Below, one piece after another: positions 10,213-62,215 of a DNA stretch of 64,000 nucleotides. The stretch is taken from the IMG/VR virus record IMGVR_UViG_3300024239_000013, positions 255,335 to 319,334 of that record; one strand, 5' to 3'. Numbering within the stretch: position 1 is the first letter of the stretch; each line of letters starts with the position of its first letter. The position numbers and the translations under genes were made by a program. Below the pieces are notes generated by a model. It ran no database searches. It saw only the letters and a list, made by a program, of their open reading frames with translations, and was not told the DNA's origin.

Positions 10213-11619
10213 TTAGGCTATAGCTAAAAATAATTCAACAGCCTTTTGTCTATAAGTTAATTTATCCTTTTTTATTTCTGGATTTTTGAGAGCCTCTTTT
10301 TTTCTATTTATTATTGATTCTGGTAACATAGGACCAAAAGTATCTTTTAATATCTTTTTGTCCTTTCTCCATTCTAGAGGAAGATGCATTGCAAATCTAA
10401 CAATTTCTAAATTTAAAAACGGATTTCTTAATTCCAATGTATGAGCCATTGACATCTTATCAAGTCTTGGTAAATGATAGAAAGTAAGTTCTTCAAAAAT
10501 ATCAGATTTTTGTGAATCGTATTCATGAATTCTTGAATACCCTCCAAATAACTCATCTGCTCCATCTCCACTTAATACTATTCTATAATCAGTATTATTA
10601 CGAATTGATTCGAATAAATGATATTGGGGTATAACAGATCCCAAATCTATCGGGCTTTCGTTCCATTGTGCATATATAAGACCATTTTTTGCAGGATCCA
10701 TATCATAGCTAAGGAAATTTACAGGAGTGTCTAAATGAGCTCTTAAATCGTTTATAAAGGGAGTTTCCCCATTTTCTATACTAAACCAAGTAACCTTTGC
10801 ATCTAACTCTTTTAAAATAGCAGCAATTATAGAAGAATCCAATCCTCCGGAAACTAAAAGGGATATCGGATAATTTCTAGATACCAATCTATTCTTAACA
10901 CTTTCAAACATCTTATCCCAAAGCCAATCGACGTATGAGTCATAATCAGCACCTTCCAATTCAGGAATTGGAAGATCCCATAATCTATAATAGTCCTTGT
11001 AGGTTTGTTCAAATCCGGGTGATTGCATATTATGATAATAAATTGTATTAGGAAGAACTCTTTTTATATTTTTATATGCTGTTCTCGTATCCGTATTATA
11101 TCCCCATTTTCTAACTGAGCTTATAAAAATTTCATCTATATCAGAAAAATTAGTATAAAGTCCTTTTATCTCAGAGCAGATTTCTCCCAATTCATTTTTA
11201 TATAAAGATTTCTTTCCAAGAGGATCTGTAAAATATATAACGTCTCCGTTTTTTGAATTGTAGACCACAATAGACCAAAAACCATCCCATTTTACAATGT
11301 GAGGAACATACATAGCAACAAAAAATTCTAAATTACCTCCTTTATAATTTTTAAAAAGATCACATAGGTATTCAGTATCAGATTCAAATATATTCGAATC
11401 ATAATTAAAAATTTCACCATTAAACATCAGATAAATACCGTCGTTTATTTCTATTGGTTGGTTCCAATTATCACCGTCTAAAGTTTGTATAGGTAATCTA
11501 TGATGACATAGCGTTATGTCACCAAATGACTCTGTTGATCTTTCTATTCCCCTGTGTTTAATAGAGTCTAATATTCTATCATCAGAATTTCCTCTTGTAG
11601 TAAGTAATATTCCACACAT
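10213..11619 (-). CDS. asnB: Asparagine synthetase B-like glutamine amidotransferase
   Basis: MCGI (Ntn Cys2), HRG, FNGEIFNY, SGGLDSS, LSGDGADELFGGY, RLDKMSMAHTLELRNPFL. Confidence 0.9.
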   Translation of the reverse strand: MCGILLTTRGNSDDRILDSIKHRGIERSTESFGDITLCHHRLPIQTLDGDNWNQPIEINDGIYLMFNGEIFNYDSNIFESDTEYLCDLFKNYKGGNLEFFVAMYVPHIVKWDGFWSIVVYNSKNGDVIYFTDPLGKKSLYKNELGEICSEIKGLYTNFSDIDEIFISSVRKWGYNTDTRTAYKNIKRVLPNTIYYHNMQSPGFEQTYKDYYRLWDLPIPELEGADYDSYVDWLWDKMFESVKNRLVSRNYPISLLVSGGLDSSIIAAILKELDAKVTWFSIENGETPFINDLRAHLDTPVNFLSYDMDPAKNGLIYAQWNESPIDLGSVIPQYHLFESIRNNTDYRIVLSGDGADELFGGYSRIHEYDSQKSDIFEELTFYHLPRLDKMSMAHTLELRNPFLNLEIVRFAMHLPLEWRKDKKILKDTFGPMLPESIINRKKEALKNPEIKKDKLTYRQKAVELFLAIA

Positions 11620-26988: not shown

Positions 26989-27891
26989 TTATTTTTTTAA
27001 AATTTTATTTATTATAGTAGGAGGAAGAGCTTTATAGGTTTTCATATATTTAATATATGATAGTTCTCTTTTAGGTGAATCTATTATAACATCACAATCT
27101 AAACCAAAAGTAGGTATTCTTCTGCTTAAAAATTGTACTGGATTTGGTGAAATAGAAATTCCGTTTTCATTTATTTCCTCAGATTCGGAATGTATATAAA
27201 AAGGTTTTTGACCGGGTCTCCATGTGGAAGCAGCTAAGAATAGTGCTTCTCTTATCGAGAGTCCACCGTCATTAAATTGATGAGGAAGAGATCTGAAACA
27301 AAGAGGAATTCCAGATTCATAATATATTCCAGAAAGAAGATCAGTGATTGAAAATAAACTTGGCTTATCGTCATTTGTTACACATAACTTCTGTCTAGTT
27401 CTATCAGATAACAATGAAAGTCTCTCGCAAAACAATTTCATCGTTTGTTTTCTGTTGCCATAAGCAGATCCAATTCTAACTATTATAGATGGATAATTAA
27501 TGCCGAGAAGGTCTAGTATAGAACTCAATCGGTTTAAAAATAATACACTATTTTCTTTTACCGATTCTATTTGACTTCCTAAGAAATGTTCCTTCCCTAC
27601 AAAAAAACAAATCTTTAGAGAATTCTTGTTAATTAATGAATTTATAGAATTTATTCTTGACGATATCTCAGGATCCTCTTCCTCTATAACATCCAGGAAA
27701 AAAGATTCATGAAAATCAATTTCACCAACATCTAAACAAACAATATTTGCATGGATCCGTGAATTTATTACACAAACATCCAATATTAACGAAAGTATAT
27801 CCTTATAAGAGGTTATTGTAAAGTCCCCCTTTATATGTTCTCTTGGAATTCCAAGATATGAAATATTCGGTTGATTATTTCCAGATAACAT
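26989..27891 (-). CDS. UvsE-like UV-damage endonuclease fold, metal ligands apparently degenerate
   Basis: IG.AYGNRK...RLSLL...KLCVTNDDK, GIPLCF, ASTW, HSES follow the UvsE layout, but HP, IH, END and DxHHH are altered. Confidence 0.65.
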   Translation of the reverse strand: MLSGNNQPNISYLGIPREHIKGDFTITSYKDILSLILDVCVINSRIHANIVCLDVGEIDFHESFFLDVIEEEDPEISSRINSINSLINKNSLKICFFVGKEHFLGSQIESVKENSVLFLNRLSSILDLLGINYPSIIVRIGSAYGNRKQTMKLFCERLSLLSDRTRQKLCVTNDDKPSLFSITDLLSGIYYESGIPLCFRSLPHQFNDGGLSIREALFLAASTWRPGQKPFYIHSESEEINENGISISPNPVQFLSRRIPTFGLDCDVIIDSPKRELSYIKYMKTYKALPPTIINKILKK

Positions 27892-30559: not shown

Positions 30560-31081
30560 TTATATTTTATATTTATTAACATCTGCCCATTCAACATCTA
30601 ATTTAAAATTAGGGTCGGTTATTTTATAATCGAAATCAGTAAAGTTTTCAAAATCCTTTTTATCTGATTCCAATCTTCTATTTACAGTATCAGCATCTTT
30701 CCTATCGGATAATCTTTTTTTTCTTATCTCCTCGTCTATATCAAAATAAACTATAAAAGACTCCTTTCTATCTTCAGGTTTTAATCTCATGATCCCGGAT
30801 GGTGTCATTATAAATAAATTGGATTTAGAAAATTCTTCAATAGTTGTTCCGTATAACCATCCATTAAAAATTACATATTCATAAAATAAATCTTTAGCTA
30901 TAAAATGATGGTTAGCAGAGTCCATAGATATAAAATGATAATCCTTCCCATCAACCTCACCAATTCTAGGAGGTCTTGTGGTATGGGATATACAATAGAC
31001 AAATCCAGATTCCTCCAGAATTTCTCTAGCATAATCTTTTCCTGAAGCTCCTTTACCCACTAATATAATTCTTTTCATCAA
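30560..31081 (-). CDS. gmk: Guanylate kinase-like
   Basis: GKGASGKD, SHTTRPPRIGEVDGKDYHF. Confidence 0.88.
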   Translation of the reverse strand: MMKRIILVGKGASGKDYAREILEESGFVYCISHTTRPPRIGEVDGKDYHFISMDSANHHFIAKDLFYEYVIFNGWLYGTTIEEFSKSNLFIMTPSGIMRLKPEDRKESFIVYFDIDEEIRKKRLSDRKDADTVNRRLESDKKDFENFTDFDYKITDPNFKLDVEWADVNKYKI

Positions 31082-33436: not shown

Positions 33437-34408
33437 TTATAAATTGAAATATTTACTATTATAGACATCTTCTATCCCGACCGAAACCGCACCTACACTA
33501 GAGCATGCGATAGATCCAGCTATATTACATAATTTTAAAGATTCTTTTATATCCAACCCAGAAGAAAAACATAAAGATATCATAGCGGTAACGGTATCAC
33601 CAGCACCCGAAACGTCGGAAATTTTCACAGGATATGAAGGAGAGTGATATGATTCATTAGCAGTGATGAAAATTACCCCATTTTCTGATAAGGTGACTAG
33701 TATAGATTCTATACCTAATTTAGATATAATATTCCTTCCCTCATAAACTATGGAATCGAAATCATTGGGACTCAATTTTTTATTGATTAAACTACAAAAC
33801 TCTAAGAAATTGGGTTTAATCAAAGTACAACCGCTATATGAATCAAAATTTTTTAATTTAGGGTCTACTAATACTGGCTTATTTTTTTCCTTGCAAATTT
33901 TTATAATTCCCTTTATAAGTACAGAGGTTAATAATCCTTTATTATAGTCCTCCATAATAACACAATCATAAAAATCTATAACGGATTCTATTTTTGATAA
34001 TATAATAGATTCTAAATTACTATCAATATCAATTATATCCTCATTATCAACTCTTAATAATTGATGAGAATTTGAAATGTATCTTGATTTAGTAGTTGTC
34101 TTTATTCCCGACCTTTTTATAAGAAGGCTGAGATCAGATTTTTCTGAAACCAAACTTTCTACCTTATCTCCATTAAGATCATTTCCTATAACAGAAATAA
34201 TATCGCTATATCCACCTAAAGAATGAATGTTTAGAAAAACATTACCTGCCCCTCCTAAATAGTAATTTTCAGATTTATTTAATAATACCGGTACTGGAGC
34301 TTCTGGGGATATTCTAGATACGATTCCATTTACATAATGGTCTAGCATGATATCTCCAATGACCAATATTTTAAGTCTGGAAAAAATATCCCTGATGTCT
34401 AGATTCAT
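33437..34408 (-). CDS. hldE: HldE/RfaE-type D-glycero-D-manno-heptose-7-phosphate kinase (stand-alone kinase domain)
   Basis: VIGDIMLDHY..G.VSRISPEAPVPV, GGAGNV, QLLRVD, DYNKG, VDPK, DVSGAGDTV. Confidence 0.88.
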   Translation of the reverse strand: MNLDIRDIFSRLKILVIGDIMLDHYVNGIVSRISPEAPVPVLLNKSENYYLGGAGNVFLNIHSLGGYSDIISVIGNDLNGDKVESLVSEKSDLSLLIKRSGIKTTTKSRYISNSHQLLRVDNEDIIDIDSNLESIILSKIESVIDFYDCVIMEDYNKGLLTSVLIKGIIKICKEKNKPVLVDPKLKNFDSYSGCTLIKPNFLEFCSLINKKLSPNDFDSIVYEGRNIISKLGIESILVTLSENGVIFITANESYHSPSYPVKISDVSGAGDTVTAMISLCFSSGLDIKESLKLCNIAGSIACSSVGAVSVGIEDVYNSKYFNL

Positions 34409-34440
34409 TTGAGATTGAGTTTTTTAGAGATTATTTATTA

Positions 34441-36108
34441 TTATAGTGTCACTTCCGGAGTTTCTTCATCTGTTCCCCCTTCTGCTGGTGTTGTTCCCTC
34501 GGTCGGTGAAACTTCTTCACCAGTAGCGGATTCTGCTCCAGCTTCTCCTGATTCTGCTTCATTTTTTTTAGCAGCTTTAGCTTCCTTTTCTTTATAGATT
34601 TTATTCATTTTTATTTCGTCTGGATTCATTCCAAGAAATCTCTGGATTAAGAAATCATTATCGAAATAAGATTTTTCCTCTTCTCCGACTTTAACTTTAA
34701 GTTCAGCTAATCCCTTAATAAATTCACTTCTTTTTGTAAATGACGTCATCTGTACAGATTCCTCAAATTCATTATCTCTATAAAAATTTAAACCAAGATT
34801 TGATTTAAAGCTTTTATCTTTAGATAATTCAGGATGATCTAAGCACATCTGAATATAAAGAGGTTTTACTAGGATCTCCTGGAATATCGATCTAAGTCTT
34901 CTAAGGAATTTTTCAAATCTTATTTCGTCTCTTTCTAGCTGATCTATAGCTATTTGATAATTGGCAGGTGTTCCATTTTTAGAGGCAAATCTAGCATAAG
35001 GTATTTTAGAATCCATTTTAAGTTTATTGAAGAAAAATAAAACACTCTCCATCACATTAAAATCTGGTCCAGATGGGTTTAACGATTCTATCTGTGGGGA
35101 CTGCCCATCTTTCTCGGGAAACAGATAATTCTTATAGAACTGAACTTTAGGTCTACCGTTAATCGTCAATTCTCCAGAAGCATCATTGATAGAAATATCC
35201 TCTTTATAGTTAGACATCAGTTGTCCCAATGTTTGCATAGCTTTTTGTGAAGATTGACTTCCTATAGGTATAATAAATTTAAGTCTATATGAAGCATTCA
35301 TAACATTCCATATAACTCTGGAGTTTTCCATTATTCTTAGAATATTATAAGATCTCACCAATCTTTCTACGTAACTTACTCTTGAAATACTATTTCCCTT
35401 TGCATAAGAAATATAGATAACCTGTTCGTTAGTGAGTTTTCGGGTCATCTGTGGATTTTTTGGATATTGTAGCCAAAATTGAACATATTCGCTTTCTCCA
35501 ACCTTTTCAACTACAGGTTGCAAAGAAGCAGGATCTAATTCTTTAAATCCTATAATCTCTTTCCCCTTGTTATCATAAATTATTTCAAAAGCTAAAAACC
35601 CATCTATGAGAAACTGTCTAAAATACTGCCACCCCAAAACACTATTCTGAAATCCAAAAACATTATATATTCTATTATAATGTTTGAACATTTTTTCCTT
35701 CATTTTTTCCTTCAGATCCATGTTGATAAATGAGGGTTGTGCAAAATAATTTCTATCGTCGTAATTTATTGCCTCGTCACTAATAGTATCCAATATAAAT
35801 TCTATCTCACCATTCAAAGAAAACTTTCTGAGATAATTTCTCTTATCGTTATAGTCTCTATCGAAATATGCAATATATTTTCTTACCTTTGTATCCTGGT
35901 AAGAAGCTGTCCAATAAAAAGCATCATTTTGGGTAAATCCTGTTCCCTCTTGACTGGAGAAGAATCCCTCAGTTTTCCCAATGGCCTGTGAATTTCTCAC
36001 AACCATATCGTCATACTGCATACCAAATTTTGATATATTCCCTAGATTTTTTAATATATTACCTAGTGCGGATTGGTTTGGTTTTAAATAATCTAAAAAT
36101 CCTGCCAT
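34441..36108 (-). CDS. gp20: Portal protein paralog B (gp20-like)
   Basis: FRQFLIDGFLAFEI, SYVERLVRSYN.LRIME.SRVIW, DEIRFEKFLRRLRSIF. Confidence 0.85.
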   Translation of the reverse strand: MAGFLDYLKPNQSALGNILKNLGNISKFGMQYDDMVVRNSQAIGKTEGFFSSQEGTGFTQNDAFYWTASYQDTKVRKYIAYFDRDYNDKRNYLRKFSLNGEIEFILDTISDEAINYDDRNYFAQPSFINMDLKEKMKEKMFKHYNRIYNVFGFQNSVLGWQYFRQFLIDGFLAFEIIYDNKGKEIIGFKELDPASLQPVVEKVGESEYVQFWLQYPKNPQMTRKLTNEQVIYISYAKGNSISRVSYVERLVRSYNILRIMENSRVIWNVMNASYRLKFIIPIGSQSSQKAMQTLGQLMSNYKEDISINDASGELTINGRPKVQFYKNYLFPEKDGQSPQIESLNPSGPDFNVMESVLFFFNKLKMDSKIPYARFASKNGTPANYQIAIDQLERDEIRFEKFLRRLRSIFQEILVKPLYIQMCLDHPELSKDKSFKSNLGLNFYRDNEFEESVQMTSFTKRSEFIKGLAELKVKVGEEEKSYFDNDFLIQRFLGMNPDEIKMNKIYKEKEAKAAKKNEAESGEAGAESATGEEVSPTEGTTPAEGGTDEETPEVTL

Positions 36109-36112
36109 TTTA

Positions 36113-37702
36113 TTATAATGTTACTTCCGGGGTTTCTTCACCTTCACCCTTATTTTCGGCTTTCTTTTTTTCCCTTTCCTTTCTTTCTAAAGCTTCTTTA
36201 TTTGCAACTATATCTTGTTTAGAAATACCTAAGTAGTTTTCTATAAGAAAAGCATTAGAAAAATACGGTTCTTCATTATCTCCTAAAATTCCACTCATGG
36301 ATAGAATTGCTTCTTTCTTCTTTTCTATTGTTGCTATTTCCTGATTTATTTTAAATGGATTATCAGAGAAATAATCTAAACCTAATTGGCTTTTAAATAA
36401 GAAATCATCTTCAAGATTAGGATATTTCTTAACCATTTGTATCCAAAGTGGTTTTATTAGAATCTCCTGGAAAGTAGATCTTAGTCTAGATATGAATTTT
36501 GAAAATCTTATTTCTTCCTTATCCAGTCCCTCTGCACCATTTGAATAAGGAGACGTACTTCCTCCATCTGGATTATGAAACCTAGAAGGAGGTACTTTAG
36601 ATTCTAATATAAACTTATCGAAAAAATAACTCAAAGGTTGAGGATCGTTTAAATTAGGACCCTCCGTATTTATAGGTTCTATAGTAGGTGTACCATTTAC
36701 ACCAGAAGGCATCAGATAGTTTTTGTAGAATTGTATCTTTGGTCTACCGTCTATTGTCAATTCACCACTTTCATCATTAAGTTCTATATCCTCCTTATAA
36801 ATGCTCATTAGTTCGCCTAGAGTTTGCATTCCTTTTTGCTGGGATTTAGATCCTATCGGAACTGTCATTTTCAGCTTAAATGAAGCGTTCATAACGGACC
36901 AAATAACTCTAGTATATTCCATGATTCGTAGAATATTATAGGGTCTTATAAGTCTCTCTATATAGCTTATTCTTGATATAGCATTACCCTTCGCATAAGA
37001 AATATAAATTATCTGTGGATCATATAAAACTCTTTTTCTTTTAGGATCTTGTGGATATTGTGTCCATGTATTTATAAAAGTCCCATCTATTTGTTTTTCT
37101 ACACTAGGAACTAGGGTTACCGCATCTAATTCTTTAAATCCTATTATATTTTCTCCTCTATCATCATAGATTATCTCAAATGCTAAGAAACCATCTATTA
37201 TAAATTGTCTGAAATATTGCCAGGCTGTTATATCGTCCGAAAATCCCCAGATGTCATATAATTTTTTATATGATTCATAAAGTTCATCCTTTAATTTTTC
37301 ATTTATATCAGTAATATCAATAAAGTCGGGATAAGCAAAGAAATTTGAAGGATCATAGGATATCGACTCGTCACATATAGTATCTAGGACCCATTCAATC
37401 TCAGGATTAAGTGAGAATTTTCTTAAGAAATCTCTTTTCCCTTTATAGTCCTTATCGAAATATCCGATAAACTGTTTAGTAGTTATATCCTGCTTTGCTA
37501 AAGTCCATAACATACTTTCGTCCTCCACGTTGGACTTATTCTTGTTTAAGAAGTTTGCTTCGGTTACACCTACAGCCTGTGAATTTCTGATGACCATGTC
37601 ATCATACTTCATACCAAAGGTACTTATCTTCCTAACAGAGTCTCGGATTCTCTGTATAACAGGAGTCTGTGATGGATTATTATTATCTACAAAGCCAGCC
37701 AT
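36113..37702 (-). CDS. gp20: Portal protein paralog A (gp20-like)
   Basis: FRQFIIDGFLAFEI, SYIERLIRPYN.LRIME, EEIRFSKFISRLRSTF. Confidence 0.85.
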   Translation of the reverse strand: MAGFVDNNNPSQTPVIQRIRDSVRKISTFGMKYDDMVIRNSQAVGVTEANFLNKNKSNVEDESMLWTLAKQDITTKQFIGYFDKDYKGKRDFLRKFSLNPEIEWVLDTICDESISYDPSNFFAYPDFIDITDINEKLKDELYESYKKLYDIWGFSDDITAWQYFRQFIIDGFLAFEIIYDDRGENIIGFKELDAVTLVPSVEKQIDGTFINTWTQYPQDPKRKRVLYDPQIIYISYAKGNAISRISYIERLIRPYNILRIMEYTRVIWSVMNASFKLKMTVPIGSKSQQKGMQTLGELMSIYKEDIELNDESGELTIDGRPKIQFYKNYLMPSGVNGTPTIEPINTEGPNLNDPQPLSYFFDKFILESKVPPSRFHNPDGGSTSPYSNGAEGLDKEEIRFSKFISRLRSTFQEILIKPLWIQMVKKYPNLEDDFLFKSQLGLDYFSDNPFKINQEIATIEKKKEAILSMSGILGDNEEPYFSNAFLIENYLGISKQDIVANKEALERKEREKKKAENKGEGEETPEVTL

Positions 37703-37735: not shown

Positions 37736-38338
37736 TTAAATTAATTTCGATCTATATTCATTATATATCCCCTGTATGGATAACCCCTCTATCATATTAA
37801 AACTAAGATAAGGAATTTTTGGCCAATCCTCCATGGAAATAACCTTAACATTTTTTATGAATTTATATTTAAATCCAAAATAGGAATTTAAATATCCAGT
37901 ACCTTTAAGAATATTCTTTAGCACAGGGTCCTTTAAATTCACTGGAACTTTGGTCGATCCTCTTTCGTATGAATTCTTATTAGCTAATAATTGTTCATAG
38001 AAATTATCATATATTCTTTCTATTATATCAACTCTTATTATATTCGGTACAGTTATTAAATCTATACCTTTTATTACAGTTCCAGATTCTAATGTGTTGA
38101 AAACATCGGTACAAATAACAAGAGGCATTCGATCTACGAAAGGCCTTTTTTTGCTAATTTCAGAATCCGTTAAATACCTAAAAGAGTAAATCTCTCCTGG
38201 GATGAATGGAGGAATGAAAGATATATCTGGTGAATCGTTCTTAAAATATTTACTTAAGAACAGATCATTAGTTGAAGTGAATATGTTTCCCGAACTAGTT
38301 TCATCTTCTTTGTATTTAAGAACTAAATCTTTATACAT
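37736..38338 (-). CDS. gp2: DNA end protector (gp2-like)
   Basis: PGEIYSFRY...PFVDRMPLVI...GIDL; adjacent to gp4. Confidence 0.7.
   Translation of the reverse strand: MYKDLVLKYKEDETSSGNIFTSTNDLFLSKYFKNDSPDISFIPPFIPGEIYSFRYLTDSEISKKRPFVDRMPLVICTDVFNTLESGTVIKGIDLITVPNIIRVDIIERIYDNFYEQLLANKNSYERGSTKVPVNLKDPVLKNILKGTGYLNSYFGFKYKFIKNVKVISMEDWPKIPYLSFNMIEGLSIQGIYNEYRSKLI
37762..37770 (-). promoter_or_regulatory. Late-promoter motif GGATATATA embedded in the 3' end of gp2
   Basis: About 60 nt upstream of the portal A start. Confidence 0.5.
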
Positions 38339-38823
38339 TATTTACTTTTAAATAGGAAATTTTCATCAATAACACCAAATTTATAGCCCCTTTTTTCAGC
38401 CCATATTTTTGCAGCTTTGAATTTTGCTTGGTTTGTTATCCAGATCTGCATATTTCTATTATATGATTTTAACTTTGCAACCGTCATCTTACCCTCATAA
38501 ATTGGTTTTTTCGTTTGATTCTCTGGTTTTATTTCAATTATCCATTCTTGAGCATCTCCAGATTCCTTTACAACCTTGATATAAAAATCTACATTATATT
38601 TATGCTCTTTTTTATCTAATGGATTATAATACTCGATAGCAATTGGTTCGGAACTCCACTTTACTATAGAATCATTTGTATCACAATACGTACAAAAACG
38701 ATACTCCCAAGAGGATCTATATATGATGTTATGAATATCTCCTATATACTTTTCAGGATTTCTGGGTTCGTATTTACCGGATTTATATTCACCGTTTGGT
38801 TTTATCTTCTTTATATCAGGCAT
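38338..38823 (-). CDS. gp4: Head completion nuclease (gp4-like, TnsA-type)
   Basis: YRSSWE, KWSSE, VDFYIK, IEIKP, AKFKAA. Confidence 0.9.
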   Translation of the reverse strand: MPDIKKIKPNGEYKSGKYEPRNPEKYIGDIHNIIYRSSWEYRFCTYCDTNDSIVKWSSEPIAIEYYNPLDKKEHKYNVDFYIKVVKESGDAQEWIIEIKPENQTKKPIYEGKMTVAKLKSYNRNMQIWITNQAKFKAAKIWAEKRGYKFGVIDENFLFKSK

Positions 38824-38829
38824 ATGGTA

Positions 38830-39189
38830 TTAAATATTATATGAATTATCATCACCAGTGATATAGCTAAATGGTATAGTTTTAGGATTTTTAGGGGGAT
38901 GTAATTTTTTCCATCCCTTAGCAAATCCATTTTTAGCAATCTGTGTAAAATAAGCAAATGGATTATTAGACTTTTCAGGATTGAATCGATTCCAATATTT
39001 ACAGAGATCTTCCATAGCAAAGGCCATACAATCTTCTTTATCTTCTGGATCTTTATATGACATTTTCTTAGCTATACCGTTTATCATTAAGGTAAACATT
39101 TCTATAGTTTCCGGTGTCAGCTTACCGGCTTTCTTTGATTCTATTACAGCAAGCATAAGCTCACTATTTTTAACATATTCTTTTGCCAT
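38830..39189 (-). CDS. gp55: Late-transcription sigma factor (gp55-like); start reassigned to ATG 39189 (MAKEYV)
   Basis: YVKNSEL, KYWNRFNPEKSNNPFAYFTQI. Confidence 0.85.
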   Translation of the reverse strand: MAKEYVKNSELMLAVIESKKAGKLTPETIEMFTLMINGIAKKMSYKDPEDKEDCMAFAMEDLCKYWNRFNPEKSNNPFAYFTQIAKNGFAKGWKKLHPPKNPKTIPFSYITGDDNSYNI

Positions 39190-39216
39190 TAATTGTTTAA
39201 TTAGTTTGGATTTATA

Positions 39217-39244
39217 TTCTAGTATAAAAAATGGTAAATATTTC
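39217..39244 (-). promoter_or_regulatory. ECF-type promoter GAAAT-N17-CTAGAA upstream of gp55
   Basis: Same spacing and -10 as the other copies. Confidence 0.6.
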
Positions 39245-39246
39245 AT

Positions 39247-39283
39247 AAAAAAAGAATGTAGCTTTTTGGTTACATTCTTTTTT
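39247..39283 (-). terminator. Intrinsic terminator
   Basis: aaaaaagaatgta-N10-tacattctttttt 13-bp stem. Confidence 0.75.
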
Positions 39284-39441
39284 ATTTTTATTCCTTTCTT
39301 CTCCGGTTTCGTCTGCATCCGAATCGTCTTTTATTTCTTTTCCATCTGGTGCCTTACTTAATTTTCCTTCCGAAGATTGAACGAAGGGTTCACCCGGTTT
39401 ATTTTGATCTTCCGATTTTGGAGCAAAATAAAAGTTACGAC

Positions 39442-57524: not shown

Positions 57525-60014
57525 TTATCTATTTCTTGCAAATTTAGGAATATTTAATAAAGGCTTAGCATTATCTATAATGTGAGCCAAATGTGCATCT
57601 CTAATTATATTTTGATTTAATACTGTTGATTGATTATCTATATCTATCATATTTTTAAATAATCTAACATTTCCTACGTATATAGGACCAGTAAATATCT
57701 TATAAGAGTTATTGTCTGTTCCGTAATAAGGACTTGAGTTATCGTTATCTATATCAGGATTAGCTTTAAAAATCATTGGAGAATTCATCATTCTTACATC
57801 TTCATGAAGCTTTTCTAATTTACTAGATTGATCTGACGAATTTACAGGATCATAAGTCATTCCCCATATATTAGCAGCAATCTGTTTATAAACATTGGAT
57901 ACATTTACAACAACTCCGTACCAGCTACCATATTCGGGTACAAATTGTAACGGCGAATTTACTATCTTATTATTAATTCTTACTACTAAACTTCCCTGTT
58001 CTAAAAAGTTGTTAGCAGTATCATCAATTACACCAGAGTGTATTAAATCCACTCTAATTCCCTTTATTGAGCTATTTTCGTCTAAGTGTAATCCACTTAT
58101 TAAATTTCTACTTTGTGCTTTTTGCATTTTCCAAACAATAGTTCCTTGGGAAAATGTTTCTGAATTATTCTTAATTTTAAATCTATATTCGTCTGAAACT
58201 TCAAGAACCTCATATCCTCCCGAATGTAGTTTATCACCTTTTATAGCAACATATCCCTCAGGATTACTATCATACGATTCCCATTTTTTTAAATTGTGTT
58301 TTTTAGGATAAGTGTTAAAATATAAATAATCAGGATCATATGATTCTAGTGTTAGATTTAGTATAGGATAAGGTCTTCTTAACATTTGTTGATTATCATA
58401 GAAATTTCTGAGGTTAAACCAACATGTATAAGAAATTTCGCCAGTAGGACCGAGTTCTGGAAGAATCTTATATCTTACTGCATTTCTATATCTATAAGGA
58501 TCGTATTTAAATTCTGAATCGTCTGCAAAAGCACCGGAAAGATCATAATAATTATTAAGTACTATTGTCCAGTTATTATTAAGATCGTATTCAATTATAG
58601 GGAGATCTTTATAAACATAAGATCTAGTTGGATCCTGTGACATTTGATTTATGGTAGTAGCATACTGCTGTGGTTTTGCTATTTTTGTCCCTTCTTCTCT
58701 GATTTCGTCACCAAATAGTTTCTCAGTAGTTAGAGTTATACCATCCAATTCCTCCTTATATGCAGGATCTTGAAAATATGTATTGCTTTTAGGACTGTAT
58801 TTTTTAAGTTCAATCTTAAAATATACGGGAGCATTCATAAAATCTCTAAACAAGTAAGTTGAATTTATCTCATAAATTCTATTAGTTAGTGGAAAATATA
58901 TGATGTCTCTTTTTCTAGGTTGTGAACCCCTTCCGAATATACTTTCGAAATATTTTTTATCTATTTGTATTTCAAAAGGCTCGTCGAACTGTAATCCGAA
59001 AGGATCAAAATTTATCTTATTATCAGGAAATTGATTTTGTGGAACTAGAACTTTCACACATTTCTCATCAACTACATTAAAGATGGTATATTCTTTTAAT
59101 ATTACATCCTTTCCTCTTGCCTGTGGTTGAACTGAATAATAATTTGCCTCTAATCCAAATAAATTATTAACCATTAAGCTAAGGTCCTGGTACATATTTA
59201 GCGCTTTGTTTACAGCATAAGGATTGAATGTAAATTTACAATCTGAAAATATTACAGGTCTATTTGAAATTTCATTAGAACATATAGCAGCAGGTTTAAA
59301 AATGACAGTTTCAACATCAGCAGCATATTCTAAATCAAGATCAAAATTAACTATTACGATGCTAGGATCTATTGGTTCTTCTGTATTATAAACTATTGTC
59401 CCATCAGGATTCACTAAAACTGAGGTAAATCTAAATTCCGGATAGAATTTATTAGCTGGGTCTAAATTTATATCAAAAAGGTCAGAAAACTCGTTGGTTA
59501 TTCCACCTAGAGCGGTTCCCACATTCGTCCAAAGAGACCACGTTTTCCCGTCTATACTATATCTAAAATCTATAGAAATATCATTAGAATCTAGTCTAGA
59601 ACCGGAATTATTACTATTCGACGCATCTATTATCCATCCATTAAACTTACTAACATTTACGAAAGGCTTATCCCAACTTAATATTCTATAATTACCTATG
59701 TACGTGAAATTAAGAGCACTATCGAGTTGCTCCATCCTGGTTTCATAATAATCAGGGGAAGAACAAGGCTTATAATAAGTCTTTCCATCAATTAAAACCT
59801 CATGATATCCACCACAACCTATTTGTTTTGCCCTCGCTTCTGCTGAATCTGGTGTAGAATATAAGTTGTCAACAGATGATTCTTTTATTTTAGTAGTGTT
59901 TTCTAATCCGTCATGATAATTATATCTATTATCTGACAATTCGTACTGTTCCCCGTTACCGTTTTTAATAGGGAATCCTTTTTTTGGAAATTTATCTTCT
60001 GGGTAAAAATTCAT
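57525..60014 (-). CDS. Neck protein (gp14-like core) with extra N- and C-terminal domains
   Basis: FGLQFDEPFEI.I.K.YF...PRKRDIIYFPLTNRIYEI; N-terminal AEARAKQIGCGGYH...YKPC. Confidence 0.65.
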   Translation of the reverse strand: MNFYPEDKFPKKGFPIKNGNGEQYELSDNRYNYHDGLENTTKIKESSVDNLYSTPDSAEARAKQIGCGGYHEVLIDGKTYYKPCSSPDYYETRMEQLDSALNFTYIGNYRILSWDKPFVNVSKFNGWIIDASNSNNSGSRLDSNDISIDFRYSIDGKTWSLWTNVGTALGGITNEFSDLFDINLDPANKFYPEFRFTSVLVNPDGTIVYNTEEPIDPSIVIVNFDLDLEYAADVETVIFKPAAICSNEISNRPVIFSDCKFTFNPYAVNKALNMYQDLSLMVNNLFGLEANYYSVQPQARGKDVILKEYTIFNVVDEKCVKVLVPQNQFPDNKINFDPFGLQFDEPFEIQIDKKYFESIFGRGSQPRKRDIIYFPLTNRIYEINSTYLFRDFMNAPVYFKIELKKYSPKSNTYFQDPAYKEELDGITLTTEKLFGDEIREEGTKIAKPQQYATTINQMSQDPTRSYVYKDLPIIEYDLNNNWTIVLNNYYDLSGAFADDSEFKYDPYRYRNAVRYKILPELGPTGEISYTCWFNLRNFYDNQQMLRRPYPILNLTLESYDPDYLYFNTYPKKHNLKKWESYDSNPEGYVAIKGDKLHSGGYEVLEVSDEYRFKIKNNSETFSQGTIVWKMQKAQSRNLISGLHLDENSSIKGIRVDLIHSGVIDDTANNFLEQGSLVVRINNKIVNSPLQFVPEYGSWYGVVVNVSNVYKQIAANIWGMTYDPVNSSDQSSKLEKLHEDVRMMNSPMIFKANPDIDNDNSSPYYGTDNNSYKIFTGPIYVGNVRLFKNMIDIDNQSTVLNQNIIRDAHLAHIIDNAKPLLNIPKFARNR

Positions 60015-60053: not shown

Positions 60054-61256
60054 TTAGAATGAATTTTGAGTGTAATTAGAATTTACCCAATCGATTATGG
60101 AAAGATATACATCTTCAGGTTTTATTGTTTTTGTACATTCAAAAGCTCTTTCGGTTCCTTTATGCAAAGGACACCACCACCAATCACCCCTATCAAATTT
60201 ATATTTGGGGTCAGTAAAGCAACCATGACAAACGTTTTTATTTATAATCCTTAAGCATTTGTCGGAAAATTCTAAAAAAGGATCTGTAAATCCAGATATC
60301 ATAACAGTTGGAATTCCTAGTCCCCAAGATAACCAAGAAAGACCTGAACTTAATCCTATAAAGAAATCACAATTCAAAAGGTCACTTATTCTATCCTCAA
60401 GAGGGAAATCCCCACTCTTATCGACTACTCCTTTTAATTTGGTTTCTCCTTTTTGTATAACCACAACTTCATAACCAGAAAATTTCAGAAGATCTACTAG
60501 TCTTTGCCATCCGCCAGGATAGTGCCAAAATTTTGAACCTGCGGTAGATTCGGTAGCTATACAAACATATTTTTTATCAAAAATTTTATTTTTCTCTCTC
60601 CTATTGATTTTAGGTCTAATTTCTCCAATATAATCAACCCCCAGTATATCACTACATACTTTTTGTAGAGGAATGCTTCTGGGATCGTTTATATGAACGT
60701 TTCTATCATCCTCTTCATACCATCCTATACCGATAACAACTTTCGTTCCTGGTTCTCTGTGGCCTGGAGGTTTAAATTTAATTTCGGGATACATCGAATC
60801 GAAAAGTTCATTATAGAAAGTAGTAACAGTTAGATCCATAACTCCATATTTTTTTCTAAATTCCTCAATATAAGGAACCCATGCTATAGTATCACCTAGA
60901 GATGAACTATCTATAGAGATACAAACCTTGCCGGTTTTTAGGTAATCGTAAAGATGAAATTCAGAGATTAATATTTTATCAGAATTATAGACTTCTATTA
61001 TGCAATTATAGATTCCCCTTTTAAATGCACTGGAGAACATATTATGAGATAGCTTAGCACCATATAATTCTTTGTTACCATCTCTTATAATGACGAAAAA
61101 ATAATCATCCGGATTTTCAGATCTTCCTGAAATATAAACTCTGGGATAATAATCAAACCAACAATGAACGTCAGTTTTTAGATTGTCACTTACAAAAATA
61201 TTTTCTGACTTTTCTATATCAGAATAAATTGAAATTGAATTTTTACTTATTTCCAT
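60054..61256 (-). CDS. TibC/Aah-type (autotransporter) protein O-heptosyltransferase
   Basis: SSSLGDTIAW.PY.EEF, KYVCIA, K.W..P.GW..LV, FIGLSSGLSWL, MISGFT, VCHGCF...FDRGDWWWCP.HKGT...FECTKTI. Confidence 0.82.
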   Translation of the reverse strand: MEISKNSISIYSDIEKSENIFVSDNLKTDVHCWFDYYPRVYISGRSENPDDYFFVIIRDGNKELYGAKLSHNMFSSAFKRGIYNCIIEVYNSDKILISEFHLYDYLKTGKVCISIDSSSLGDTIAWVPYIEEFRKKYGVMDLTVTTFYNELFDSMYPEIKFKPPGHREPGTKVVIGIGWYEEDDRNVHINDPRSIPLQKVCSDILGVDYIGEIRPKINRREKNKIFDKKYVCIATESTAGSKFWHYPGGWQRLVDLLKFSGYEVVVIQKGETKLKGVVDKSGDFPLEDRISDLLNCDFFIGLSSGLSWLSWGLGIPTVMISGFTDPFLEFSDKCLRIINKNVCHGCFTDPKYKFDRGDWWWCPLHKGTERAFECTKTIKPEDVYLSIIDWVNSNYTQNSF

Positions 61257-62215
61257 TACACGTTTAATAATTTTAAAATTAAAGAAACGTTAAATGCTTT
61301 ATCCGAACTTAAATAGTGAACATTTTTCATATTGTCATACATATCCAAATAAGTCGGTAGTTTCTTTATAACAGTAGGCAAATTCCAAGAAAGAGATTCC
61401 TTTATTGAAAGAGGATTTAATTCAAAATTTGATGTAAATAAAAATAAATCTGATGCTTGATAGAACAAATCGACATCGGATCTTTCTCCCCATATATGAC
61501 AATTAGAAGGCACATCAGAGACCAAAGGTTCCCAATAATCTCTAAAATTATCTGCAAGATTACCAACAAAATGGAATATGATCTGGGTCTCTAAATTCAT
61601 ATTTAAAATTTCTCTAGCATACTCAAAAATCTCAGATTGATTTTTTCCAGGTGTAAAAAGACCAACGTTTACGATATGTTTATATTTTGGATTAAAACCT
61701 AAAAATTCCATACATTTTGATTTTTCAGCCTTTAATTCCTCTATCGGATATTCGAGAATAATTGAAGGTATTCCTAGCACTTTGAATTTTTCATCGTTCC
61801 ACTTAGAAACCATTACAAAAAGATCAGGTTTGTAAATTTTACTAGAAACCTCAGTTACCGAACTATGACAACTTTCTACTATTTTATATTTTCTATCTTT
61901 AGAAAATATTTTTAGAAGAATCTCATCAGGAACAAAGCTTTCACAAAACTCTTCAAAATGAATTACGTCTGGGTTTATTTTTTCTATAGTCTCATAAAGT
62001 AAAGCCCCGTCACTAAAAATGGGGATAAATCTATCCCCTAATAATTCTTTTATTCTGTTCCTTTGTACTACATATGCATCTCCAAGATAATCATATTCCA
62101 CACAATATACTTCTCCGACATCATTAAAGACTTCTATTTTTTTCCAAAGATATTGTGGTAATCCACCAGTAGAAAGATGTGGGGATATGTATAATATTTT
62201 TAATTTATCCTGCAT
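61256..62215 (-). CDS. GT4-family glycosyltransferase
   Basis: SPHLSTGGLPQY, NVGLFTPGKNQ, WGERSDVD.FYQASDLF, ELNPLSIKE. Confidence 0.85.
   Translation of the reverse strand: MQDKLKILYISPHLSTGGLPQYLWKKIEVFNDVGEVYCVEYDYLGDAYVVQRNRIKELLGDRFIPIFSDGALLYETIEKINPDVIHFEEFCESFVPDEILLKIFSKDRKYKIVESCHSSVTEVSSKIYKPDLFVMVSKWNDEKFKVLGIPSIILEYPIEELKAEKSKCMEFLGFNPKYKHIVNVGLFTPGKNQSEIFEYAREILNMNLETQIIFHFVGNLADNFRDYWEPLVSDVPSNCHIWGERSDVDLFYQASDLFLFTSNFELNPLSIKESLSWNLPTVIKKLPTYLDMYDNMKNVHYLSSDKAFNVSLILKLLNV

What the first reader, a model, noticed from the sequence alone, without database searches (positions are those of the whole stretch)
33437..34408. Stand-alone ADP-heptose pathway kinase placed right behind the portals
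Seen: an HldE kinase domain without the adenylyltransferase half, 32 nt downstream of portal B. Known: this step lies in the GmhA-HldE-GmhB-HldD route to ADP-heptose. Inference: it supplies donor sugar for the heptosyltransferase at 60054; the remaining steps would be elsewhere in the genome or host-supplied.
Basis: partly seen in the sequence, partly recalled or inferred. Interest (0 to 1): 0.6.

Follow-up and report, generated by a model that had tools for sequence, protein, structure and literature searches.

The report
Phage heptose kinase feeding protein heptosylation
The gene is a real stand-alone heptose-7-phosphate kinase carried by a 319-kb T4-like phage; together with a phage isomerase it most likely boosts ADP-heptose supply for two phage enzymes of the family that puts heptose on proteins, not on lipopolysaccharide.

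Summary
Observation confirmed. [quoted passage not shown] It has no adenylyltransferase half and starts 32 nt after the second portal gene. It matches rfaE_dom_I at 3e-94. All PfkB catalytic motifs are present. The AlphaFold model matches Burkholderia HldA at TM 0.9.

The gene is fixed in this slot (portal-portal-kinase-ligase) across an all-viral clade of jumbo phages. Its nearest cellular relatives are stand-alone Bacteroidota kinases.

The pathway search gave a GmhA isomerase about 79 kb away. No GmhB, HldC or HldD was found, so those steps must come from the host. Some relatives carry a small HldC.

The "heptosyltransferase at 60054" is not an LPS enzyme. It belongs to the TibC/Aah family of protein O-heptosyltransferases, with the catalytic Asp, the ADP-heptose contacts and the four iron-finger cysteines intact. 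It sits directly upstream of a neck-protein gene in 61 of 80 related viral loci. A second copy lies elsewhere in the genome.

All ten tested records in the kinase clade carry this enzyme. One complete relative keeps it but lacks both kinase and GmhA, so the kinase boosts supply and is not required.

The kinase is a new member of a known kind. Virion protein heptosylation is the interesting, unproven reading.

The parts
33437..34408 (-). [quoted passage not shown]
   Evidence: TIGR02198 3.1e-94. PDB 4E84 HldA 1.2e-48. AF2 model pLDDT 93, TM 0.88/0.91 to 4E84. GGAGN, PNxxE and DVSGAGD are invariant in the 28-sequence alignment A1.
34409..34440 (-). 32-nt spacer between portal B and the kinase. 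It is A-rich, has no Shine-Dalgarno motif, and contains AATAAATA, one base off the T4 late-promoter box.
   Evidence: Sequence read. ATAAATA occurs 48 times in the 60 nt upstream of ORFs against 10.4 expected from the genome-wide frequency (AT-rich spacers were not controlled for, so this is a weak hint). Only 1 of 324 genes has a 5-mer SD core.
60054..61256 (-). BAHT-1: TibC/Aah-family protein O-heptosyltransferase (400 aa), the likely consumer of ADP-heptose
   Evidence: TIGR04414 2.9e-75, 253.6 bits, above the cut-off of 200. TibC 4RAP 4.2e-49, with D110, T226, K230, R286, W305 and Cys339/342/358/370 all aligned to identical residues. Model TM 0.74/0.76 to TibC against 0.37-0.48 to WaaC/WaaF.
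61256..62215 (-). GT-B (GT1/GT4-type) glycosyltransferase. Its stop overlaps the BAHT-1 start, and the pair is conserved.
   Evidence: Pfam Glycos_transf_1 9.9e-9. phrog_2170 glycosyltransferase. Found within the 6-kb flank upstream of BAHT in 73 of 80 viral loci, immediately upstream in most of them, and fused with it in G002-G004.
57525..60014 (-). 829-aa neck protein (gp14-like core at residues 327-412, plus large extensions), directly downstream of BAHT-1. It is a candidate acceptor by inference only.
   Evidence: Pfam T4_neck-protein 4e-6 and phrog_679 head closure Hc2. The order GT1-BAHT-neck-p260-TerL-sheath is kept in 61 of 80 BAHT-bearing viral loci.

Best explanation
The ORF is a functional stand-alone HldA-type kinase. 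[quoted passage not shown] It is an auxiliary metabolic gene that has been fixed between the duplicated portal genes and the DNA ligase gene in a lineage of jumbo T4-like phages. The hosts are probably Bacteroidota.

Proposed pathway:
1. The phage GmhA (genome 209799-210413) converts sedoheptulose-7-P to heptose-7-P.
2. This kinase makes heptose-1,7-bisphosphate.
3. Host GmhB and the host's separate HldC finish ADP-D,D-heptose.
4. No epimerase is needed. Both phage heptosyltransferases carry Ser at the position of TibC Pro300, and in Aah that residue tolerates both epimers.
5. The ADP-heptose is used by the phage's two TibC/Aah-type O-heptosyltransferases, each coupled to a second GT-B glycosyltransferase. 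They most likely glycosylate serine residues of phage structural proteins: the neck protein encoded next to BAHT-1, or the Ser/Thr-rich fibre proteins.

What is shown: sequence, fold and motif identity of the kinase, GmhA and the BAHTs; the gene inventory; synteny; co-inheritance.

What is inferred: enzymatic activity, host completion of the pathway, the coupling of the kinase to the BAHTs, and the nature of the acceptor.
For: Kinase identity:
-.
- It is a stand-alone gene with no domain II remnant.

Fixed gene of a viral clade:
- It lies in a 28-row all-viral clade with SH-aLRT 100.
- Portal-kinase-ligase-clamp loader synteny holds in 26 of the other 27 loci of that clade; the long-branch row L084 shows none of these neighbours.
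- Catalytic residues are invariant at 36-63% identity.

Partners:
- GmhA matches NF001628 at 2.4e-67, at a conserved distance of about 79 kb.
- The only GT9-like genes in the genome are the two BAHT-type genes.
- BAHT defining residues and fold are present.
- Ser at the TibC P300 position tolerates both epimers.

Co-variation:
- BAHT is present in 10 of 10 clade records and 0 of 9 kinase-bearing records outside it.
- GmhA is present in all four complete kinase-bearing clade genomes.
- GmhA and the kinase are both missing from the complete relative G019.

The host can supply the rest:
- 128 of 151 sampled Bacteroidia have a stand-alone rfaE_dom_I gene (the count includes one unpublished genome, G137, and the conclusion does not depend on it).
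- 5 of 5 Flavobacteriales tested have a separate HldC.

Structural-module placement of BAHT-1.
Against: - No biochemical data exist.
- The kinase is 26.7 kb from BAHT-1 and 79 kb from GmhA, so there is no operon link.
- G019 (complete) and G026 (complete) carry BAHT without the kinase, and many kinase-bearing phages lack BAHT. The coupling is therefore not obligatory, and the 10/10 against 0/9 pattern may be largely shared ancestry.
- No adenylyltransferase was found in this genome, while relatives G001-G003 have one.
- The acceptor is unknown. The neck protein has no AIDA/TibA-like repeat.
- BAHT-2 has Met in place of the adenine-contacting Arg286.
- The TIGR02198 score is below NCBI's cut-off (315.6 against 345), though that is typical of Bacteroidia.
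Confidence: 0.6

Rival explanations
1. Host-surface remodelling. The kinase and GmhA boost ADP-heptose for the host's own LPS or glycan heptosyltransferases. The purpose would be to keep the envelope intact or to alter receptors against superinfection. This is the usual reading of rfaE-like genes in cyanophages and pelagimyophages. Under this reading the phage BAHTs are unrelated to the kinase.
For: rfaE-like kinases, often with phosphoheptose isomerase and a nucleotidyltransferase, are annotated in many T4-like cyanophages. In pelagimyophages they are read as LPS genes (PMC7029224). Many kinase-bearing phage records have no BAHT.
Against: This genome has no LPS-type heptosyltransferase. Its only GT9-like genes are the two BAHT-type genes. 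The kinase clade and BAHT are co-inherited. The cyanophage kinases are only about 27% identical and were not placed on the tree here.
Confidence: 0.17
2. Host-protein heptosylation. The ADP-heptose feeds the BAHTs, but the acceptors are host proteins, either for takeover or to mask surface adhesins or receptors. Virion proteins are not the target.
For: The known BAHTs modify bacterial surface adhesins (PMC4358343). BAHT-2 lies outside the structural module, next to an FkbM methyltransferase and mobile-element genes.
Against: BAHT-1 is embedded in the neck/terminase/sheath block in 61 of 80 viral loci. No BAHT above the cut-off was found in 151 sampled Bacteroidia, so there is no sign of a native host substrate class for it.
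Confidence: 0.1
3. DNA hypermodification. The heptose is transferred to a hydroxymethylated base in phage DNA, in the way T4 glucosylates hmC.
For: The genome has a canonical ThyA and also a divergent 264-aa thymidylate-synthase-superfamily protein (phrog_160 2.4e-26; Pfam below threshold). That protein could be a pyrimidine hydroxymethylase. T4 DNA glucosyltransferases are also GT-B enzymes (own knowledge).
Against: The BAHT match is full length. It includes the N-terminal barrel and the iron finger, which bind a protein beta-helix in TibC. No heptosylated DNA is known. The function of the second TS-like protein was not tested.
Confidence: 0.06
4. The kinase acts on another sugar phosphate, so it is PfkB-family but not heptose-specific. 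It would then be unrelated to heptose.
For: The score lies below the curated TIGR02198 cut-off. The matching phage family phrog_8133 is listed as 'unknown function'.
Against: There is a gap of about 240 bits to the next PfkB subfamily. The best sequence and structure match is HldA. Most Bacteroidia genomes have one gene that scores in the same 285-345 bit range. A GmhA co-varies with the kinase.
Confidence: 0.05

Closest known systems
HldA of Burkholderia cenocepacia (PDB 4E84), the stand-alone D-beta-D-heptose-7-phosphate kinase of split HldA/HldC pathways
   Same: Single-domain PfkB kinase of about 320 aa. Alignment at 1.2e-48 with GGAGN, PNxxE and DVSGAGD conserved. Model TM 0.88/0.91 with rmsd 2.1 A.
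   Different: About 34% identity. It is encoded by a phage, next to the portal and ligase genes, with no hldC in the genome.
HldE (RfaE) of E. coli, the bifunctional kinase/adenylyltransferase
   Same: The kinase half matches NF008454 positions 7-308 at 3e-68.
   Different: Domain II (TIGR02199) is absent from the gene and from the whole genome.
Stand-alone rfaE-domain-I kinases of Bacteroidota (about 330 aa)
   Same: These are the nearest cellular relatives, at 37-43% identity. They have the same length and architecture and the same sub-threshold TIGR02198 score range.
   Different: The phage genes form their own clade of 28 viral rows with support 100.
rfaE-like 'carbohydrate kinase' genes of T4-like cyanophages (P-SSM2, S-SSM7, S-CAM1) and pelagimyophages
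   Same: Phage-borne heptose-pathway genes regarded as auxiliary metabolic genes (PMC7029224).
   Different: Only about 27% identical. In those phages the kinase is clustered with a nucleotidyltransferase and sometimes an isomerase. None of them appeared among the four phage records with a BAHT match.
TibC and Aah, the bacterial autotransporter heptosyltransferases (for the partner gene at 60054)
   Same: Family model above the cut-off. All catalytic, ADP-heptose-binding and iron-finger residues are present. Full-length fold match. The enzyme gene lies directly upstream of a large structural gene, as aah does with aidA and tibC with tibA (own knowledge).
   Different: Phage-encoded. No autotransporter is present; the downstream gene is a neck protein. 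It is coupled to a second glycosyltransferase. Ser replaces Pro300. No BAHT above the cut-off was found in 151 sampled Bacteroidia.

Membership tests
HldA / rfaE domain I heptose-7-phosphate kinase (TIGR02198) | PfkB (ribokinase-like) fold over the whole protein | tested here: met
   Pfam PF00294 covers residues 13-309. AF2 model pLDDT 93; best PDB match is HldA 4E84, TM 0.88/0.91.
HldA / rfaE domain I heptose-7-phosphate kinase (TIGR02198) | Full-length match to the rfaE_dom_I model, clearly above any other PfkB subfamily | tested here: met
   315.6 bits over positions 5-311 of 315, against 74.9 bits for ribokinase. It lies below NCBI's naming cut-off of 345. So do 111 of the 128 Bacteroidia genomes that hold such a gene.
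HldA / rfaE domain I heptose-7-phosphate kinase (TIGR02198) | PfkB catalytic motifs: GG switch, NxxE, and the GAGD anion hole with catalytic Asp | tested here: met
   L51-G52-G53-x-x-N56, N200-x-x-E203 and D265-V-S-G-A-G-D271 are invariant in 28 sequences and aligned with HldA.
HldA / rfaE domain I heptose-7-phosphate kinase (TIGR02198) | ATP-dependent 1-O-phosphorylation of D-glycero-D-manno-heptose-7-P | not testable with these tools
   This needs an enzyme assay or complementation.
HldE bifunctional enzyme | C-terminal cytidylyltransferase-fold adenylyltransferase domain (TIGR02199) | tested here: not met
   NF008454 is matched only over 7-308 of 475. There are 49 nt to the next gene. TIGR02199 finds nothing in the genome at E<=10.
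Complete phage-encoded ADP-heptose pathway (GmhA-HldA-GmhB-HldC-HldD) | GmhA sedoheptulose-7-P isomerase | tested here: met
   Genome 209799-210413 (-), 204 aa. NF001628 2.4e-67, TIGR00441 2e-54, SIS_2.
Complete phage-encoded ADP-heptose pathway (GmhA-HldA-GmhB-HldC-HldD) | GmhB phosphatase | tested here: not met
   TIGR00213 and the HAD-IIIA model TIGR01662 find no match at E<=10 and E<=1.
Complete phage-encoded ADP-heptose pathway (GmhA-HldA-GmhB-HldC-HldD) | HldC adenylyltransferase | tested here: not met
   TIGR02199 finds none. tblastn with the HldC-like genes of relatives G001 and G002 finds none. PF00483 finds none. The only clear cytidylyltransferase-fold domain is the C-terminus of a 658-aa RNA-ligase fusion with an NMNAT-type GRFQPFHNGH motif.
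Complete phage-encoded ADP-heptose pathway (GmhA-HldA-GmhB-HldC-HldD) | HldD epimerase | tested here: not met
   PF01370 finds only a 26-position scrap in a 120-aa frame.
BAHT (TibC/Aah) protein O-heptosyltransferase, for the gene at 60054-61256 | Family model above the curated cut-off | tested here: met
   TIGR04414 253.6 bits against a cut-off of 200.
BAHT (TibC/Aah) protein O-heptosyltransferase, for the gene at 60054-61256 | Catalytic base Asp110 and ADP-heptose contacts Thr226, Lys230, Arg286, Trp305 | tested here: met
   All five are aligned to identical residues in the phmmer alignment to 4RAP. Residue roles are taken from PMC4358343. In BAHT-2, Arg286 is replaced by Met.
BAHT (TibC/Aah) protein O-heptosyltransferase, for the gene at 60054-61256 | Iron-finger cysteines (TibC Cys339, 342, 358, 370) | tested here: met
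   All four Cys are aligned in BAHT-1 and BAHT-2, and are invariant in alignment A2 as C343, C346, C362, C374.
BAHT (TibC/Aah) protein O-heptosyltransferase, for the gene at 60054-61256 | N-terminal beta-barrel plus GT-B catalytic domain | tested here: met
   The model has beta strands over residues 29-101. Foldseek gives TM 0.74/0.76 to TibC over about 390 columns. The iron-finger stretch is modelled with low confidence.
BAHT (TibC/Aah) protein O-heptosyltransferase, for the gene at 60054-61256 | Dodecameric ring | not testable with these tools
   The assembly is too large for the complex tool, and no job was sent.
BAHT (TibC/Aah) protein O-heptosyltransferase, for the gene at 60054-61256 | Autotransporter adhesin as adjacent substrate | tested here: not met
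   The downstream gene is an 829-aa gp14-like neck protein without AIDA-type repeats. It therefore works like a BAHT, but on a different and unknown acceptor.
LPS heptosyltransferase (WaaC/WaaF, GT9), for the gene at 60054-61256 | Match to LPS heptosyltransferase models and fold | tested here: not met
   TIGR02193 18.3 bits against a cut-off of 185. Pfam GT9 19.8 bits against 22. TM 0.37-0.48 to WaaC/WaaF.

The most novel reading that the evidence does not exclude
A widespread lineage of jumbo T4-like phages, probably of Bacteroidota, carries its own protein O-heptosylation system. The system consists of GmhA and HldA (plus HldC in some members) to raise ADP-heptose, and TibC/Aah-type heptosyltransferases coupled to a second glycosyltransferase. 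These decorate virion proteins (neck or fibres) with heptose-containing glycans. This would be the first phage use of the BAHT family, and a new kind of virion glycosylation.
Probability: 0.4. Interest if true: 0.7.

Novelty: new member of a known kind. Interest (0 to 1): 0.5.

Why it matters
The kinase alone is an ordinary auxiliary metabolic gene. Its interest is that it points to a module that my literature searches did not find described: TibC/Aah-type protein heptosyltransferases conserved next to the neck gene in at least 61 viral loci.

If phages heptosylate their own virions, that could affect adsorption, stability and recognition by host defences. It would extend virion glycosylation, known from mycobacteriophages (own knowledge), to a new sugar, a new enzyme family and a new host phylum.

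It also gives a simple test system. E. coli already makes ADP-heptose, so co-expression of BAHT-1 with candidate phage acceptors is straightforward.

Tried and rejected
- HldC, GmhB, HldD and NTP_transferase searches of the whole genome were all negative. tblastn with the relatives' HldC-like genes was also negative.
- The 658-aa RNA-ligase/cytidylyltransferase fusion was considered as the missing adenylyltransferase. Its motif (GRFQPFHNGH) and its best models are NMN-adenylyltransferase-like, not HldC-like. Its N-terminal half (about residues 1-410) matches BAHT-lacking huge phages too. It showed no significant similarity to the 'cytidylyltransferase like protein' near the BAHT fusion of Microcystis phage Mel-JY01. 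It stays unassigned.
- The 322-aa ORF behind the weak second CTP_transf hit is DUF7487/DUF559 and not a nucleotidyltransferase.
- Late-promoter reasoning was tried. The exact TATAAATA box is not enriched in the window (15 found, 17.7 expected). The shorter ATAAATA is enriched upstream of ORFs, but the genes it precedes are a mix of replication and structural genes. No timing claim is made.
- An AIDA/TibA-like repeat acceptor was not found. The neck protein has no such repeat. Ser/Thr-rich stretches exist in fibre-like proteins, but nothing ties them to the BAHTs.
- Metatranscriptome contigs touch the kinase. They are short, DNA carry-over cannot be excluded, and they say nothing about expression level.
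- No complex prediction was sent, because neighbouring genes alone were not reason enough.
- Literature searches for a phage BAHT, or for phage virion heptosylation, returned nothing relevant.
Full report
**What is there.** The window is the last 64 kb of a 319,334-bp IMG/VR virus record that CheckV rates as 100% complete. GC content is about 31%, and almost all genes lie on the minus strand. The finding is one ORF at 33437-34408 on the minus strand, 323 aa.
- Pfam PfkB scores 1.3e-28.
- NCBIfam TIGR02198 (rfaE_dom_I, heptose-7-phosphate kinase) scores 3.1e-94, 315.6 bits, over positions 5-311 of 315. The next PfkB subfamily, ribokinase, scores 74.9 bits. The bifunctional HldE model is matched only in its kinase half.
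- The only PDB match below 1e-10 is the stand-alone HldA of Burkholderia cenocepacia (4E84, 1.2e-48).
- An AlphaFold model built on 28 homologues has pLDDT 93. It superposes on HldA with TM 0.88/0.91 and rmsd 2.1 A, against about 0.76 for ribokinases.
- The PfkB motifs GGAGN, PNxxE and DVSGAGD are invariant across phage and bacterial homologues of 40-65% identity.
- The gene starts 32 nt after the stop of the second Portal_T4 gene and ends 49 nt before an ATP-dependent DNA ligase gene. No decayed adenylyltransferase half is hidden there.

**A fixed gene of a phage lineage.**
- Homologues of 48-66% identity sit in the same order on metagenomic contigs: gp2-like, portal, portal, PfkB, ligase, clamp loader, guanylate kinase, 5'-3' exonuclease.
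- In a tree of 146 kinases (66 from viral contigs, 80 cellular), the window's protein lies in a clade of 28 rows, all viral, with SH-aLRT 100.
- 26 of the other 27 loci of that clade keep portal-kinase-ligase-clamp loader. The exception is one long-branch row.
- The kinase evolves faster (36-63% identity) than its neighbours (ligase 59-85%, clamp loader 66-88%).

**Origin and probable host.**
- The nearest cellular relatives, at 37-43% identity, are overwhelmingly stand-alone genes of about 330 aa in Bacteroidota and other FCB-group bacteria.
- In a sample of 151 Bacteroidia genomes, 128 carry one such gene. Most score 285-345 bits, below the curated cut-off like the phage gene. This count includes one unpublished genome, G137, and nothing depends on it.
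- Stand-alone is therefore the normal architecture in that phylum and not a truncation of HldE.
- The portal is closest to those of the huge phages LR7565xx and the Prevotella Lak phages.
- Shine-Dalgarno motifs are almost absent upstream of the phage's genes, and the leaders are A-rich. Both features fit a Bacteroidota host by inference.
- Near-identical DNA occurs in subsurface, wastewater, freshwater, estuary and groundwater runs.

**The rest of the pathway.**
- A GmhA gene is present at genome 209799-210413 (minus strand), next to a gp32-like gene (NF001628 2.4e-67). It keeps the same distance of about 79 kb from the kinase in relatives.
- No rfaE domain II, GmhB, HAD-IIIA phosphatase, NTP_transferase or real epimerase was found.
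- Relatives G001 and G002/G003 carry small HldC-like genes. tblastn with these against this genome finds nothing.
- The only clear cytidylyltransferase-fold domain is the C-terminus of a 658-aa RNA-ligase fusion. Its GRFQPFHNGH motif and best models are NMN-adenylyltransferase-like.
- Five of five Flavobacteriales genomes that hold the stand-alone kinase also hold a separate HldC. Host completion of the pathway is plausible but inferred.

**The supposed consumer.** The gene at 60054-61256 gives only a sub-threshold GT9 hit in Pfam. It matches TIGR04414, the autotransporter O-heptosyltransferase family (Aah/TibC, BAHT), at 2.9e-75 and 253.6 bits, above the cut-off of 200. LPS heptosyltransferase I scores 18 bits against a cut-off of 185.
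- Against TibC (4RAP, 4.2e-49), the catalytic Asp110, the ADP-heptose contacts Thr226, Lys230, Arg286 and Trp305, and the four iron-finger cysteines are all conserved. The residue roles come from PMC4358343.
[quoted passage not shown] Aah accepts both epimers. The lack of HldD is therefore no obstacle.
- The AlphaFold model (pLDDT 73) matches TibC over its full length, TM 0.74/0.76, against 0.37-0.48 for WaaC/WaaF.
- A second BAHT domain forms the C-terminus of a 773-aa GT4-BAHT fusion at genome 152727-155048. It lies next to an FkbM methyltransferase, has all motifs except Arg286 (Met instead), and has all four cysteines.
- These two are the only GT9-like genes in the genome.

**Context of BAHT-1.**
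- A GT1-type glycosyltransferase gene (61256-62215) overlaps its start.
- Downstream follow an 829-aa gp14-like neck protein, a 260-aa protein, the large terminase and a 1117-aa sheath.
- The order GT1-BAHT-neck-p260-TerL-sheath is kept in 61 of 80 BAHT-bearing viral loci. In some relatives GT1 and BAHT are fused.
- PHROGs has no family for this protein.
- Among 50,697 phage records, only three huge uncultured phages and Microcystis phage Mel-JY01 match. In Mel-JY01 the domain ends a 1226-aa 'FkbM methyltransferase'.
- No BAHT above the cut-off was found in 151 sampled Bacteroidia.
- I found no paper on phage BAHTs.

**Is the kinase tied to the BAHTs?**
- For: among 19 kinase-bearing viral records, the 10 that belong to the window's kinase clade all have BAHT and the 9 outside it have none.
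- For: all four complete clade genomes also have GmhA.
- For: in the sub-lineage G019/G020/G021 the slot between portal B and ligase is empty, with 221 nt and no remnant. The complete genome G019 has neither kinase nor GmhA, so the two supply genes go together.
- Against: G019 keeps GT1-BAHT-neck. A second complete genome (G026) has BAHT without the kinase. Only 6 of 20 BAHT-bearing records have a kinase, though many of these are fragments.
- Caveat: the 10/10 against 0/9 pattern is largely one shared history and not many independent events.
- My reading: the kinase and GmhA are a dispensable supply booster for a heptose-consuming system, and the only identifiable members of that system in this genome are the BAHTs.

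**The acceptor.** The acceptor is not known. The placement beside the neck gene recalls aah-aidA and tibC-tibA (own knowledge), but the neck protein has no AIDA-type repeats. Several fibre-like proteins at genome 215788-245482 have long Thr/Ser runs. Nothing links them to the BAHTs.

**Rivals.**
- Host LPS or surface remodelling is the usual reading of phage rfaE genes. There is no LPS heptosyltransferase here.
- Host-protein heptosylation is possible.
- Heptosylation of modified DNA cannot be excluded. The genome has a canonical ThyA plus a divergent TS-like 264-aa protein. The full-length TibC-like architecture argues for a protein acceptor.
- A non-heptose substrate for the kinase is unlikely.

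**Weak side evidence.**
- An AATAAATA box lies in the 32-nt spacer. ATAAATA is over-represented upstream of ORFs (48 against 10.4 expected), but the genes it precedes are mixed.
- Short contigs from metatranscriptome libraries lie on the kinase, but DNA carry-over cannot be excluded.

**Verdict.** The gene is a new member of a known kind: the HldA-type kinase, and a phage auxiliary gene of the ADP-heptose route. The finding's value lies in exposing a conserved, undescribed phage module of TibC/Aah-type protein heptosyltransferases.

Noticed in passing
window 34441-36108 and 36113-37702 (minus strand): Two adjacent Portal_T4 (gp20) genes, about 50% identical to each other. The pair is kept as a pair in many relatives, with each copy 67-91% identical to its orthologue.
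   Followed up: partly
genome 152727-155048 (outside the window; L105:16728-19049, minus strand): A 773-aa fusion of a GT4/GT1-type glycosyltransferase with a second TibC-like heptosyltransferase domain. Arg286 is replaced by Met and the four iron-finger Cys are kept. It lies next to an FkbM-type methyltransferase (L105:19054-19905). Microcystis phage Mel-JY01 has an FkbM-to-BAHT fusion of 1226 aa.
   Followed up: partly
genome 201181-203157 (outside the window; L005:7182-9158, minus strand): A 658-aa protein with an N-terminal RNA-ligase-like domain and a C-terminal NMN-adenylyltransferase-like domain (motif GRFQPFHNGH). Its N-terminal half (about residues 1-410) has homologues in the huge phages LR7565xx. 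Its function is unknown, and it is not clearly the missing HldC.
   Followed up: partly
genome 215788-245482 (outside the window): Several very large fibre-like proteins (up to 1546 aa) contain long poly-Thr/Ser runs such as TTTTSTTTTS. These are typical of O-glycosylated linkers and are possible glycosylation targets.
   Followed up: no
genome 149298-150801 (L105:13299-14802, minus strand): An IS200/IS605-type pair (Y1 transposase plus OrfB/TnpB with a Cas12f-like TNB domain) sits inside the phage genome. It lies close to a Shedu SduA_C-like protein (L105:14860-15495) and between ThyA and the second heptosyltransferase.
   Followed up: no
genome 147204-148430 and 163110-163904 (L105:11205-12431; L275:1321-2115): A canonical thymidylate synthase, 408 aa with an apparent insertion, plus a second divergent TS-superfamily protein of 264 aa (phrog_160 2.4e-26; Pfam below threshold). 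The second could be a pyrimidine hydroxymethylase, which would imply modified DNA.
   Followed up: partly
relative record G022, contig position 114587-114763: A GmhA fragment in a 90-aa frame with two in-frame TAG codons, in a relative that still has the kinase. It is either a decaying gene or a hint of TAG recoding, as reported for Lak-type phages (own knowledge).
   Followed up: no
window 10213-11619 (minus strand); genome 144798-145883 (L105:8799-9884): Further metabolic genes: an asparagine synthase (glutamine-hydrolysing type) and an M42 glutamyl aminopeptidase.
   Followed up: no
genome 43883-48374 (plus strand, outside the window): Three tandem paralogous genes of about 300 aa with leucine-rich-repeat-like units (NKLTSLE...). 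They lie on the opposite strand to most of the genome.
   Followed up: no
window 38830-39318, 38338-38823, 26989-27891, 30560-31081: A small sigma-70 region-2 protein (possibly a gp55-like late sigma factor), a TnsA-N-like endonuclease (annotated on the 161-aa orthologue in relatives), a UvdE UV endonuclease and a guanylate kinase flank the portal-kinase-ligase block.
   Followed up: no
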